DNA of 63,851 nt, counting the filler, from Olpidium bornovanus S191 (lineage: Eukaryota > Fungi > Olpidiomycota): the NCBI GenBank assembly GCA_017911155.1. It is 27 parts of 27 records of this genome, joined end to end, with 100 filler letters (N's around TTAATTAATTAA, not from the genome) between each part and the next. Parts side by side here need not be neighbours in the genome. Positions count along the whole stretch, not along the records: positions 18,041 to 20,693 come from JAEFCI010009937.1; 26 more parts are not named here. The stretch is one strand, 5' to 3'. A program made the position numbers and the translations under genes. A model generated the notes under the pieces. It ran no database searches and was not told where the DNA came from. It was given only the letters and a program-made list of their open reading frames with translations. Each line of letters starts with the position of its first letter. The first letter of the stretch is position 1. This document shows, in pieces, positions 17,923-20,793 of this stretch.

Positions 17923-18590
17923 CCCCCCCCCCCCAACCCCNNNNNNNNNNNNNNNNNNNNNNNNNNNNNNNNNNNNNNNNNNNNTTAATTAATTAANNNN
18001 NNNNNNNNNNNNNNNNNNNNNNNNNNNNNNNNNNNNNNNNCATGCGCGCTCGTTTTGTCGCGGGCCAGCTCCTCGAGAGGAGAGATTTATTTGAAGAAAG
18101 AATTTCCGTTTCTGTATTGTTCAGAATGACGGGATGAGGGTTCGAGTACCAGAGGAACAGACGGAGACCGCGGGGAGGGGTCGGGAGTGTGGGTTGGGGG
18201 GAAGAGAGGGGGGGTTGTGGCTGAAATAAGGAGAAAAAGTGACCTCGGCCTTCAGACCAGATACACTTGCGCTTTTTTTTGAAGGGGTTCTCGCAGAGTT
18301 GCTTACCTGCCTGACTTACTCTCTAGTCTGTGGTCCCCTTGGGGTTGGCCAGGTTCAATGATTCCAGTGTGGAATCAAAGAAGGCTTACTTGGTTTTCGG
18401 GTTTAGGGGTTTTCCGGTTTTCGGGTTTTCGGCGCCGGTTTTCTGTGCGGCCGGCAGGGAGGGGGAGCTCTAGGCGAGGAGCCCACCACCCGCACTCCCC
18501 CCCCCTCTCTCCCCGTCCCCACGCCACACTCTCTGCCACCCACGCCACACTCTCTGCCACCCACGTTGTGCGGCTATTAGTATTCACGCA

Positions 18591-18822
18591 TCCCAGACCC
18601 TGATCTTACCACCAGCAGGAAAGACCAAAGCTGAAAATTTTGACTCGACGAAGGCTTTTGAACGAGCCTAAGATCAGCCAGATCCGATGATGGAGTCCCG
18701 ATGAACGGTGCACTTAAACGTGACCACCAGAAAAGTGAAAATGGTTCTTTCAGTTTTCACTGTACCCCCAGTATCTGATCTTACCACCAGCAGGACAGAC
18801 CAGCGCGGAAAATTTTGAAACT
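18591..18822 (+). repeat. Pair of about 55-bp direct repeats (possible retroelement internal/LTR debris)
   Basis: CTGATCTTACCACCAGCAGGA.AGACCA..GC.GAAAATTTTGA occurs near 18600 and 18776. A 21-bp tandem duplication lies at about 18517-18564. Confidence 0.7.
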
Positions 18823-18929
18823 TAGCAGGCGTATTATACTGGTGGGCTCGAACGTCGGGGTTACGGTGGTTTTCTTTGTTTATTATTCTTCCAGCGGGTG
18901 GGCGGGAAGCAGCGCGGGCTATCGGCGTA

Positions 18930-19634
18930 GTCAAGTTGATGCTGCGGACTTACCTCGGGACAAGCGAAGGAGACTGGCTCGCCGCAATCCCACTCCTCGA
19001 GTTTGCCCATAACGTGACACGACACACGATAACAGGAGAATTCCCTCACATGTTGGCGCCAGGAACGGACCTCCGCGGACTAGATTGCGTCTGGAAAAAC
19101 ACGCCCTTGGCCTTTCTCTCTGCGACTTTGGAAAGAGCGCGGGCCGCTCTCGAAAAAGCGCAAAAACAACAAGAAAAGGCATACAATACCCGACGGAAGC
19201 TCGTGCGATTCGCAGTCAACGATCACGTTTTCCTCCGCCGAGAAGGCCTCCTGAGACACGAGGAAAAACTGCTTGCACGTAACTACTGTGCACCATTTAT
19301 TGGACCATTCCGCGTCCTGGCAGTCGATCAGGCACATGACAACTATATGCTAGACCTGCCCGCCCGCCTCCGCGTACATCCAGTCTTCCGCATCTCCCTC
19401 CTTTGCCCCTATCATGATTTGGACTGCAAAAAACGAGTTAATCGGCCAGAAGCAGACGAAGAAGGTGAATATGAAGTTGACAAGATCATCGGGATGCGTA
19501 CCCGCCACGGCAAGCGCCAGTTCCGCGTCCTTTGGCTCGGTTATGACAGATCGGAAGCCACGTGGGAGGATGAAGACAAACTGATAAACGCTCGAGAAGC
19601 CGTGGCGGAGTACCTCGACCGCACCCCCGAATAA
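18930..19634 (+). mobile_element. Ty3/Gypsy chromovirus remnant: integrase C-terminal half, GPY/F motif and chromodomain
   Basis: DWLAAIPLLEFAHN, RFAVNDHVFL, PFIGPFRV, LPARLRVHPVFRISLL, EYEVDKIIGMR..QFRVLWLGYDRSEATWEDEDKL. The DDE core upstream is missing. Confidence 0.95.
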
Positions 19635-19779
19635 CAAGCTCACCTTGGAAAGCGGCGATCACCCCAGTGTCGTAATCGCCAACCGGCGAGCCACGCGAGT
19701 CAAGACCCGATTCAACGTCTTTATTGCTAGCAGGCCCCGTGTCATCATCGCCCGAGGGCTCAGCGTGCCTGCAAAGTTC

Positions 19780-20640
19780 ATCATCGCCCAAAGGCTCAGA
19801 GCGCCGAGTATCCGGCGCAGATCCGAGGCCTTTGGCGGTGATGAAAGACCATAAGCGTGTCGGAATGGCATGCGCCATGGTGACACAGCCGGCGTGGCCC
19901 TCTGGGAAATCGATGACCTCAGTTCCGTGAGGCTCCATGTTGGCGAAGAAAAACAACATGTTGTCTTTCAGTGGAAAAAAGGCGCCGTGTCCCAACAAGA
20001 TGAACTCGCTGCCGACAATCCCGGAACGTTCCATGCAAACGGCCAGGCACAAATGATTGGCATCATGGTCTATGTGGACGCGCGGTTCAAAAACGAACAA
20101 AACAGCCGGAATCAGACAAGGCGAACAATGTGGACCCAGAAACGAACGATAAAGACACCGCTTACTTGGTAGTTGTGCATCGCCCGCATTGGCAAAGGCG
20201 CATCCGGAAAAGCGCTGTGGAAAGCCGCAACCTCGTCACTCAGGCAGGAGTTGTGAGCTTCCACGTGAGCCAGGAACTCCTTCGCCAGGCCATGCTGCGC
20301 CGAGCAATTGGCACGTGTCATCAGGCCCTCCGGCTCCTTCTGCAGCACCGGCTTCGCCAGATAGCTGTGCAGCTCACGCACGCCACGAGGGCTCGCCAGG
20401 CCGAACCCTGCCATGCATCCTCCTGTGCGCCCTCCCGTCAGATGCTGACGGTGCCGGTGCCGGCTCCGGCTCACCCCCATCTGGGGCTTCATCAAGACCA
20501 GGCACCTCTGAAGCCACCGGTTGGCCGTGGTCGCGGTGGCAAAGCCGCGACAGAAGCCGCCAACAACGGCCATCGTCTCTCGTCGAAGATCCAGCACTCG
20601 CACATCTGCCTCGTTGGGTCGACGTTCTGCAGGCACGAAA
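19780..20640 (-). pseudogene. Copy 1 of a dispersed degenerate coding family, candidate TET/JBP-like 2OG-Fe(II) dioxygenase
   Basis: Homologous to 53224-53943: FFFANMEPHGTEV vs SFFANLEPHDTGV (9/13 identical), and GCVTMAHAIPTRLWSFITAKGLGSAPDTRRSEP vs GRVTTGHTIPSRLWNFITAKGCGLAPDTRHFEP (23/33). HID at 20068-20076 and a distal His at 19927-19929. The repeat is observed; the function is inferred. Confidence 0.5.
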
Positions 20641-20793
20641 GGTCAATCAACTAGGATGAAGCAGGCGCAAGGGAGGAGCCCAAACTCGACATGNNNNNNN
20701 NNNNNNNNNNNNNNNNNNNNNNNNNNNNNNNNNNNNNTTAATTAATTAANNNNNNNNNNNNNNNNNNNNNNNNNNNNNNNNNNNNNNNNNNNN

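What the first reader, a model, noticed from the sequence alone, without database searches (positions are those of the whole stretch)
19780..20640. Dispersed TET/JBP-like 2OG-Fe(II) dioxygenase family, two degenerate copies among transposon debris
Seen: two unrelated contigs share a minus-strand coding block (23/33 and 9/13 identical residues in the best segments, weaker similarity over about 200 aa). Each copy keeps part of a dioxygenase facial triad. Copy 1 has HxD (HID unspliced). Removing a 96-nt GTAAGC..CATAG intron (20165-20070) instead gives LP-N-H-D-AN, which aligns to PP-H-H-AN in copy 2 and suggests an ancestral H-H-D. Both copies keep the distal His (EPHGT/EPHDT). Copy 2 has R-V-T, while copy 1 has C-V-T (TGT vs CGC). 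Established: 2OG-Fe(II) dioxygenases use HxD...H plus an RxS/T 2OG-binding motif. TET/JBP genes are expanded and travel with KDZ transposons in basidiomycetes such as Coprinopsis. Inference: this may be a mobile, multicopy DNA base-oxidase family in an early-diverging fungus, which I do not know to be described.
Basis: partly seen in the sequence, partly recalled or inferred. Interest (0 to 1): 0.8.

Follow-up and report, generated by a model that had tools for sequence, protein, structure and literature searches.

The report
Retrotransposon carrying a TET-like dioxygenase gene
The window holds a dead copy of a gene for a TET/JBP-like DNA-base oxidase that sits backwards, introns included, right behind the pol gene of a Ty3/gypsy retrotransposon in the fungus Olpidium, which matters because such genes were known only on DNA transposons.

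Summary
The minus-strand coding block is real. It belongs to a small protein family: 21 hits among 1.84 billion representatives. At least five further copies lie on other contigs of the same Olpidium bornovanus assembly, and more occur in environmental assemblies.

Profile-profile comparison places the family in the TET/JBP dioxygenase superfamily, nearest the "PE type" of fungal DNA transposons (hhalign 93.6%, E 2e-7). HxD, the distal His and an Arg align in register.

Homologues show a conserved phase-0 intron at 20165-20086 (80 nt), so H-I-D is the true HxD.

The window copy is a pseudogene. It has an in-frame TAG, a 1-nt deletion, a lost 3' splice site (AA), Arg to Cys, and a lost stop codon.

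The main new point concerns the neighbouring "debris". In eight loci the gene lies tail-to-tail with the chromodomain end of a Ty3/gypsy pol. In one locus the two stop codons share a CTAG, next to an intact 910-aa pol. The dioxygenase therefore appears to be an antisense passenger gene of an LTR retrotransposon, not of a KDZ DNA transposon.

LTRs were not recovered, the fold prediction failed, and activity is untested.

The parts
20166..20693 (-). Middle exon of the dioxygenase pseudogene, cut at its 5' side by the contig end. It carries an in-frame TAG (20653-20651) and a 1-nt deletion (about 20578-20574) relative to intact homologues. It ends ...MHNYQ at 20166.
   Evidence: Three-frame translations. 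tblastn with the L001 protein needs two frames here. Family alignment.
20086..20165 (-). Conserved phase-0 intron (80 nt) with donor GTAAGC at 20165-20160. The 3' splice site is mutated: AA at 20087-20086 instead of AG.
   Evidence: Intron at the identical position in L001 (87 nt), L006 (70 nt), L007 and L008 (146 nt, TACTAAC branch), all GT..AG. L010 is intronless and reads NYQPKTHQD across the junction.
19635..20085 (-). Last exon with the catalytic core: PRVHIDHDANH...GSEF...DNMLFFFANMEPHGT...GCVTMAHAIP, plus an acidic tail. HxD is 20076-20068, the distal His 19929-19927, and Cys in place of the family Arg 19887-19885. The duplicated acidic motif is encoded by the 28-nt direct repeat 19742-19769 / 19778-19805. 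The expected stop next to the pol stop is lost, and the frame stays open to TGA 19488-19486.
   Evidence: CMD1 His345/Asp347/His397 align with these residues. hhalign to PE and PU TET types.
18906..19634 (+). 3' end of a Ty3/gypsy chromovirus pol: end of the integrase core, the SH3_Tf2-1 domain (about 19221-19415), the chromodomain (about 19470-19622), and stop TAA 19632-19634. It converges on the dioxygenase gene and is truncated at its 5' side near 18905.
   Evidence: Pfam Chromo 2.7e-13 and SH3_Tf2-1 8.9e-09. 54% identity to the C-terminus of the intact 910-aa pol of L008/L009. A colinear 1559-nt alignment with L006 spans both genes.
18041..18905 (.). Unrelated repeat debris that replaces the rest of pol. 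It holds a 21-nt x2 tandem (18518-18559), a 52-nt direct repeat (18592-18643 / 18767-18818) and a G-rich/C-rich inverted repeat. Bases 18841-18913 recur in L006 (2353-2431) in another context.
   Evidence: There is no pol homology upstream of about 18906.

Best explanation
The window holds a degenerate copy of a Ty3/gypsy chromovirus-type retrotransposon. Between pol and the presumed 3' LTR, on the opposite strand, this element carries a three-exon gene for a TET/JBP-superfamily Fe(II)-dependent dioxygenase.

Shown:
- The protein family exists and evolved under purifying selection.
- It is homologous to transposon-borne fungal TET/JBP dioxygenases, with HxD...H...R in register.
- It is physically linked tail-to-tail to pol in eight diverged loci, leaving no room for an LTR between the two genes.
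- Its introns are conserved.
- The window copy is dead: premature TAG, frameshift, lost splice acceptor, Arg to Cys, lost stop.

Inferred:
- The gene's introns lie on the antisense strand, so they are not spliced out of the sense genomic RNA and survive retrotransposition.
- The gene is transcribed from its own promoter near the 3' end of the element.
- The enzyme oxidises methylated bases (5mC, possibly 6mA or T) on element or nearby DNA, relieving methylation-based silencing. That would suit an element whose chromodomain integrase is expected to direct it into heterochromatin.
For: Family and selection:
- 21 hits in 1.84 billion representatives.
- At least five other Olpidium copies.
- dN/dS 0.07-0.35 with saturated synonymous sites.

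TET/JBP homology:
- hhalign versus PE type: 93.6%, E 2.2e-7, 191 columns. Versus PU type: 78.8%, E 1.7e-5, 189 columns. Reversed and 30 shuffled controls scored at most 22 against 58 and 45.
- Pfam hits only PF20515 (best 6e-5; consensus 4e-4) and PF12851.
- CMD1 (7cy4) is the top hit of all three PDB profile searches and the sole hit of one (E 0.003-0.02). CMD1 His345/Asp347/His397 align in two of the three alignments; the third starts after the HxD.

Linkage to pol:
- Seen in the window, L003, L006, L007, L008/L009, L011 and L012.
- L008 has an uninterrupted pol with RVT_1, RNase H, H2C2, rve, SH3_Tf2-1 and Chromo.
- Its stop and the dioxygenase stop share CTAG. In L011 the two stops abut.
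- A 1559-nt colinear alignment at 68% identity spans both genes between the window and L006.

Introns: conserved positions.

Against: - No LTR, PBS, PPT or target-site duplication was recovered, because all contigs are short. Residence of the gene inside the element is therefore deduced from the abutting stop codons and repeated linkage, not seen directly.
- All Pfam scores are below the gathering cut-offs.
- Two AlphaFold runs gave unfolded models (pLDDT 55 and 50), and Foldseek found nothing. The double-stranded beta-helix fold is not shown.
- Pairwise identities of dioxygenase and pol across loci did not correlate. The data were few and short, so this is uninformative.
- L010 shows a different layout.
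- The assembly is a binned metagenome, so assignment to Olpidium rests on that binning.
- Enzyme activity, substrate and expression are untested.
Confidence: 0.72

Rival explanations
1. The dioxygenase is an ordinary multicopy host gene family. The chromovirus merely inserts preferentially, or was once fixed, next to its 3' end, and the pair was later spread by segmental duplication.
For: No LTRs were found, so the boundaries of the element are unknown. Chromoviruses do have target preferences (established knowledge). Pairwise identities of the two genes do not visibly covary.
Against: An integrated element ends with a 3' LTR, yet in L008 and L011 the pol stop and the dioxygenase stop overlap or abut. 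The same junction occurs in eight loci whose genes are only 45-77% identical, from several samples. One locus has a fully open 910-aa pol. The Olpidium copies are degenerate and sit among other TE fragments, as TE copies do.
Confidence: 0.15
2. The protein is not a DNA-base oxidase. It is some other Fe(II) dioxygenase, for example a protein or RNA hydroxylase, or a non-enzymatic accessory protein that only resembles TET/JBP locally.
For: Pfam hits are below threshold and cover about 40 residues. No fold could be predicted. Residues that read the 5mC base in CMD1/TET2 (Asp350/Asn1387, Phe416/Tyr1902) have no clear counterparts in the alignment. The AG type gives no hhalign signal.
Against: Profile-profile matches to two published TET types span about 190 columns, including the N-terminal GG-x-M-x-x-G motif, NY-x-R-x-H-x-D/E, GG-x-F, the distal HGT and, against the PU type, the Arg segment. 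No other 2OG-oxygenase family of Pfam is hit. CMD1 is the top PDB hit each time; the only other hit, GreA/GreB, appears in two of the three searches.
Confidence: 0.1
3. The shared block is non-coding TE sequence, and the open frames and motifs are chance.
For: The window copy itself is broken in several places, and its database gene model (P0001) is mis-spliced.
Against: Amino-acid conservation holds across DNA that is 65-70% identical, with pS 0.64-0.77 against pN 0.13-0.41. Splice sites are conserved. Intact exons exist in L001, L007, L008 and L011.
Confidence: 0.01

Closest known systems
[quoted passage not shown]
   Same: This is the best profile-profile match: 93.6%, E 2.2e-7, 191 columns. 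NY-x-R-x-H-x-E/D, GG-H/E-F, N-T/M-L and W/x-HGT align. Both are carried by mobile elements and are multicopy, and both are presumed to counter silencing.
   Different: The carrier here is an LTR retrotransposon, not a DNA transposon. The gene is antisense to the element's own genes and keeps introns. The metal motif is HxD rather than HxE. The host is Olpidium, outside Dikarya. Sequence identity is only about 16%.
[quoted passage not shown]
   Same: hhalign 78.8%, E 1.7e-5 over 189 columns. Shared motifs are GG-x-M-W/V-x-x-G, H-x-D-x-D-A/x-N, the distal H-x-T and R-x-G/T-x-S/A.
   Different: The differences in carrier, orientation and host are the same as for the PE type. Identity is about 14%.
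CMD1 of Chlamydomonas reinhardtii (PDB 7cy4), a TET homologue that makes 5-glyceryl-methylcytosine
   Same: It is the top solved structure found by all three family profiles (E 0.003-0.02). The GGEFVLP and HGT motifs match in all three alignments, and the HxD matches in two. CMD1 His345, Asp347 and His397 are its iron ligands.
   Different: CMD1 uses ascorbate, and its Trp358 blocks 2OG. The family has a small residue at the aligned position and a conserved Arg 14 residues after the distal His, as in TET2. I therefore expect a 2OG user, but this inference rests on a weak alignment. CMD1 is a host gene.
Antisense accessory ORFs between pol and the 3' LTR of plant Ty3/gypsy elements (for example the Retand lineage, PMC11963269)
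   Same: The position (downstream of pol, opposite strand) and the logic are the same: an antisense gene can keep its own regulatory signals and introns through retrotransposition.
   Different: Those plant ORFs have no assigned enzymatic function and are unrelated in sequence. I know this comparison from the paper's title and abstract and general knowledge, and did not test it here.

Membership tests
TET/JBP superfamily of Fe(II)/2-oxoglutarate dioxygenases | Significant similarity to curated family models (Pfam PF12851 Tet_JBP, PF20515 Tet-like 2OG-FeII_Oxy_6) | tested here: inconclusive
   These are the only Pfam families hit, by 6 and 2 of 20 members. The best results are 6e-5 / 23.6 bits (P0020) and 4.2e-4 / 20.8 bits (consensus). 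All are below the gathering scores of 27 and 34.9 and cover only the last 40 or so profile positions. The window protein alone hits nothing.
TET/JBP superfamily of Fe(II)/2-oxoglutarate dioxygenases | Homology to accepted members over the whole catalytic domain | tested here: met
   hhalign family profile versus PE type: 93.6%, E 2.2e-7, 191 columns. Versus PU type: 78.8%, E 1.7e-5, 189 columns. Reversed and shuffled controls scored at most 22.3. Versus AG type: no signal. CMD1 is the top PDB hit.
TET/JBP superfamily of Fe(II)/2-oxoglutarate dioxygenases | HxD/E...H iron-binding triad in register with known members | tested here: met
   In the family the His of HxD is nearly invariant, the distal His lies 49 residues later, and these align with CMD1 H345/D347/H397 and the PU and PE invariants. 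The window keeps H-I-D and EPHGT. L003 has H-I-S and L004 has H-I-N.
TET/JBP superfamily of Fe(II)/2-oxoglutarate dioxygenases | Basic residue after the distal His that holds the 2OG C5 carboxylate (TET2 Arg1896, NgTet1 Arg289) | tested here: inconclusive
   Most members have Arg 14 residues after the distal His (G-R-L-T-M-A), and it aligns with T-R-x-G-x-S of the PU type. The window copy has Cys (TGT 19887-19885). Its role cannot be shown without a structure.
TET/JBP superfamily of Fe(II)/2-oxoglutarate dioxygenases | Double-stranded beta-helix fold | tested here: inconclusive
   Two AlphaFold2 runs on about 20-sequence alignments gave pLDDT 54.9 and 49.6, with the beta-rich half below 50. 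Foldseek versus PDB gave no match at E <= 0.001.
TET/JBP superfamily of Fe(II)/2-oxoglutarate dioxygenases | Oxidation of a methyl group on a DNA base (5mC, T, 6mA) | not testable with these tools
   This needs recombinant protein and LC-MS.
Ty3/gypsy chromovirus (LTR retrotransposon) | pol with RT, RNase H and integrase in that order, plus a C-terminal chromodomain | tested here: met
   The L008 910-aa ORF has RVT_1, RT_RNaseH, Integrase_H2C2, rve, SH3_Tf2-1 and Chromo. The window keeps only the integrase end, SH3_Tf2-1 and Chromo.
Ty3/gypsy chromovirus (LTR retrotransposon) | Long terminal repeats, PBS/PPT and target-site duplication enclosing the internal region, here including the dioxygenase gene | tested here: inconclusive
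   No LTR-like repeat pair was found in any locus. The contigs are 1-10 kb and end inside the element. Upstream regions of L001, L003 and L006 are not alignable outside the conserved upstream exon.
TET-carrying DNA transposons (KDZ, Plavaka, hAT and others) | DDE/CxC transposase or Helitron Rep next to the TET gene, with TIRs at the ends | tested here: not met
   Pfam on the window ORFs gives only Chromo and SH3_Tf2-1 at significant scores. Neighbouring called genes in L003 and L004 have no Pfam hit on record. No flanking inverted repeats were found. The neighbours that can be identified are retrotransposon pol genes.

The most novel reading that the evidence does not exclude
A lineage of LTR retrotransposons (Ty3/gypsy chromoviruses) in Olpidium and related uncultured organisms has captured and long maintained an antisense, intron-bearing TET/JBP-type dioxygenase gene as an anti-silencing weapon. 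This would be the first retrotransposon-borne TET/JBP gene and the first such transposon-TET association outside Dikarya. The family may also link the PE and PU types of fungal transposon TETs.
Probability: 0.6. Interest if true: 0.8.

Novelty: new variant of a known kind. Interest (0 to 1): 0.72.

Why it matters
Transposon-encoded TET/JBP dioxygenases are thought to let elements escape DNA-methylation silencing. So far they are documented only on DNA transposons of Dikarya, and a recent survey explicitly notes that no retrotransposon carries one and speculates on why (PMC12730594).

A chromovirus that carries such a gene would overturn that pattern. It would extend the TET-transposon arms race to an early-diverging fungal lineage. 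It would also give a natural example of an antisense, intron-containing passenger gene in a fungal retroelement.

The finding further predicts oxidised methyl-bases in Olpidium DNA. It supplies new, very divergent TET-like sequences for enzymology, including co-substrate choice and 5mC versus 6mA specificity.

Tried and rejected
Rejected. It keeps the exon-1 frame and hits a stop after 32 codons. Homologues fix the acceptor 16 nt upstream.
- **GTGTCT donor.** I briefly considered an 89-nt intron with this donor. I dropped it for the same reason.
- **Database gene model P0001.** Rejected as mis-spliced. It skips the HxD and reads the antisense of the chromodomain.
- **Pfam on the unspliced and spliced window protein.** Nothing.
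- **phmmer versus PDB with the L001 protein.** Nothing.
- **Word-indexed protein searches.** Only 2 and 5 hits. A search with a 69-aa CMD1 fragment returned nothing.
- **JGI metagenome scan.** The first alignment was too diverse. The second matched 600 patterns but found no relative.
- **AlphaFold2, twice.** pLDDT 55 and 50. Foldseek on the poor model gave noise.
- **PHROGs and NCBIfam.** Only weak hits that cannot be interpreted.
- **Co-divergence of dioxygenase and pol identities.** Too few and too short to say anything.
- **LTR search by self and cross BLAST.** No repeat pair.
- **KDZ/CxC transposase or TIRs.** None found.

Full report
**What the piece is.** Places 18041-20693 are the entire 2653-bp contig JAEFCI010009937.1 of the Olpidium bornovanus assembly GCA_017911155.1. 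That assembly is a tetranucleotide-binned metagenome from non-axenic zoospores (PMC7865070).

The plus strand from about 18906 to 19634 encodes the C-terminal end of a Ty3/gypsy pol. It comprises the last part of the integrase core, an SH3_Tf2-1 domain (8.9e-09) and a chromodomain (2.7e-13). Upstream of about 18905 the pol homology stops. It is replaced by unrelated repeats, part of which (18841-18913) recurs elsewhere in the assembly.

**Checking the observation.** The block is real and conserved.
- A first search found the annotated but mis-spliced model P0001 and a 64%-identical protein, P0002, on a Logan contig.
- A full HMMER scan of 1.84 billion representatives found only 21 hits.
- At least five of these lie on other contigs of the same Olpidium assembly: BJ554DRAFT_4510, _2109, _499 and _2733 besides _2439. 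The rest come from ENA and Logan assemblies.

The proposed 96-nt intron is wrong. It is a multiple of three, so it leaves exon 2 in the exon-1 frame, which stops after 32 codons.

Seven homologous loci have an intron exactly between ...[N/D]YQ and PR-x-H-x-D. L001, L006, L007 and L008 have canonical GT..AG, and L008 also has a TACTAAC branch site. L010 is intronless and reads NYQPKTHQD straight across.

In the window this intron is 20165-20086 (80 nt). Its donor GTAAGC is intact but its acceptor is AA. HID is therefore the genuine HxD, and there is no ancestral H-H-D.

**State of the window copy.** Compared with intact relatives it has five defects:
- an in-frame TAG (20653-20651);
- a 1-nt deletion near 20578-20574 that shifts the frame;
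- the lost splice acceptor;
- Arg to Cys at the conserved G-R-L-T-M-A motif;
- no stop where relatives stop, so the frame runs on into the antisense of the chromodomain until 19488-19486.

It is a pseudogene, and the contig end removes its 5' part.

Other Olpidium copies are damaged too:
- L003 has H-I-S and a GA donor.
- L004 has H-I-N and is truncated.
- L006 has a frameshift in the last exon.

By contrast, L001, L007 (last exon), L008 and L011 look intact over the parts their contigs cover.

**Is it a real protein family?** Yes. Between copies whose DNA is 65-72% identical, synonymous sites are saturated (pS 0.64-0.77) while non-synonymous differences are 0.13-0.41. This gives dN/dS of 0.07-0.35.

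The gene has at least three exons. A further upstream exon (...YW-x-V...GL-x-V/I-KLE|GT) is conserved in L001, L003 and L006.

**Is it TET/JBP-like?** Single-sequence tests are weak, but they all point the same way.
- Of 24,736 Pfam models, only PF20515 (Tet-like 2OG-FeII_Oxy_6; 6 of 20 members, best 6e-5; family consensus 4.2e-4) and PF12851 (Tet_JBP; 2 members) are hit repeatedly. Two other families are hit by a single member each, at E above 0.1. All scores are below the gathering cut-offs.
- Three versions of the family profile searched against all PDB sequences each return the Chlamydomonas TET homologue CMD1 (7cy4) as top hit (E 0.0096, 0.02, 0.003). The only other hit, GreA/GreB, appears in the first two searches.
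- Two of the three alignments put the family's HxD on CMD1 His345/Asp347, and all three put its HGT on His397. The structure paper names these three residues as the iron ligands.

The decisive test used the TET domain sequences printed in Table S1 of Kojima 2025.
- hhalign of the family profile against five PE-type sequences gives 93.6% probability, E 2.2e-7, over 191 columns.
- Against seven PU-type sequences it gives 78.8%, E 1.7e-5, over 189 columns.
- The motifs in register are GG-x-M-x-x-G, NY-x-R/P-x-H-x-D/E, GG-E/H-F, N-M/T-L and the distal HGT. Against the PU type the Arg segment also aligns.
- Reversed and 30 column-shuffled controls score 9-22, against 45 and 58 for the real comparisons.
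- The published types score lower against each other (PU-PE E 0.028). The AG type gives no signal.

Kojima reports that PE-type models superpose on CMD1, NgTET and CcTET.

I therefore accept membership of the TET/JBP superfamily, nearest the PE type. I note that the fold itself could not be shown here. Two AlphaFold runs stayed unfolded (pLDDT 55 and 50) and Foldseek found nothing.

**What the surroundings say.** The retrotransposon fragment is not incidental debris. The dioxygenase gene and the chromodomain end of pol converge in the window, L003, L006, L007, L008/L009, L011 and L012. In these loci the dioxygenases are 45-77% identical and the pol tails are mostly 52-61% identical.
- The window and L006 align colinearly over 1559 nt (68%) across both genes.
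- L008 carries an uninterrupted 910-aa pol with RVT_1, RNase H, H2C2, rve, SH3_Tf2-1 and Chromo.
- In L008 the pol stop and the dioxygenase stop share the palindrome CTAG.
- In L011 the two stops abut. In L007 the two genes overlap by 36 nt.

An independently integrated element would have a 3' LTR after pol, and there is no room for one. The simplest reading is that the gene lies inside the element, between pol and the 3' LTR, on the opposite strand.

This also explains the conserved introns. Introns of an antisense gene are not recognised in the sense genomic RNA, so they survive reverse transcription.

No DDE/CxC transposase, Helitron Rep or TIRs were seen.

**How it probably works (inference).**
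- The element is transcribed from its 5' LTR for replication.
- The dioxygenase is transcribed from the other strand, spliced and translated.
- As an Fe(II) enzyme with HxD...H and an Arg placed as in TET2, it probably uses 2OG.
- It would oxidise methylated bases on element or neighbouring DNA and so counteract methylation-dependent silencing. That would suit a chromodomain-bearing element, since chromodomain integrases are thought to target heterochromatin (established knowledge, not tested here).
- 5mC is the default guess for the substrate. 6mA is abundant in early-diverging fungi and is a substrate of CcTet, so it is an alternative. Both statements rest on my own knowledge and the abstract of PMC11040006.

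**Comparison with the known.** TET/JBP genes on fungal DNA transposons are well documented. [quoted passage not shown] A search for papers combining TET/JBP with LTR retrotransposon found none. The finding is therefore a new variant of a known kind.

**Limits.** These points remain open:
- the LTRs and the ends of the element;
- the organisms behind the environmental contigs;
- expression, fold and activity;
- the deviant layout of L010.

Noticed in passing
L001 1230-1349; L003 1002-1106; L006 8182-8072: A further upstream exon of the dioxygenase gene (...YW-x-V...GL-x-V/I-KLE followed by GT) is conserved in three loci. In L001 a roughly 430-nt intron follows it. The P0008/P0023 lineage seems to read through without this intron. 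The window lacks this part because it lies beyond the contig edge.
   Followed up: partly
L010 1203-2354 (Logan SRR31067991): This dioxygenase copy has no intron at the NYQ|P junction. It is followed on the same strand by an integrase H2C2 + rve ORF, unlike the tail-to-tail layout elsewhere. It may be a retro-copy of the spliced mRNA or a rearrangement.
   Followed up: partly
L008 755-758; L011 1283-1288: The stop codons of pol and of the dioxygenase share the palindrome CTAG in L008. In L011 they abut as CTA|TGA. This is an unusually tight convergent gene junction.
   Followed up: yes
window 19742-19769 and 19778-19805: A 28-nt direct repeat (86%) encodes a duplicated acidic tail motif (SEPLGDDE / AEPSGDDD). 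The same duplication is present in the L007 and L003 proteins, so it is old and part of the protein.
   Followed up: partly
window 18041-18905: The repeat-rich stretch replacing the 5' part of pol holds a 21-nt x2 tandem (18518-18559), a 52-nt direct repeat (18592-18643 / 18767-18818) and a G-rich/C-rich inverted repeat (18199-18214 / 18499-18514). Bases 18841-18913 are 75% identical to L006 2353-2431 in a different context, so they probably belong to another repeat family.
   Followed up: partly
L006 4892-5308, 8893-9876 and 833-1045: The 9.9-kb Olpidium contig also holds Ty1/copia-like fragments on the minus strand (an RNase H-like region and a gag CCHC knuckle) and a second short dioxygenase fragment. 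It is a nest of transposon remains.
   Followed up: no
hhalign comparisons: The Olpidium family matches both the PE and PU types of fungal transposon TETs better than those types match each other (PU-PE E 0.028). It might serve as a linking sequence for their phylogeny.
   Followed up: partly
window 19486-20636 (database model P0001, BJ554DRAFT_2439): The deposited gene model skips the HxD segment and adds about 100 residues that are the antisense reading of the pol chromodomain. P0003 (BJ554DRAFT_499) has the same artefact.
   Followed up: yes
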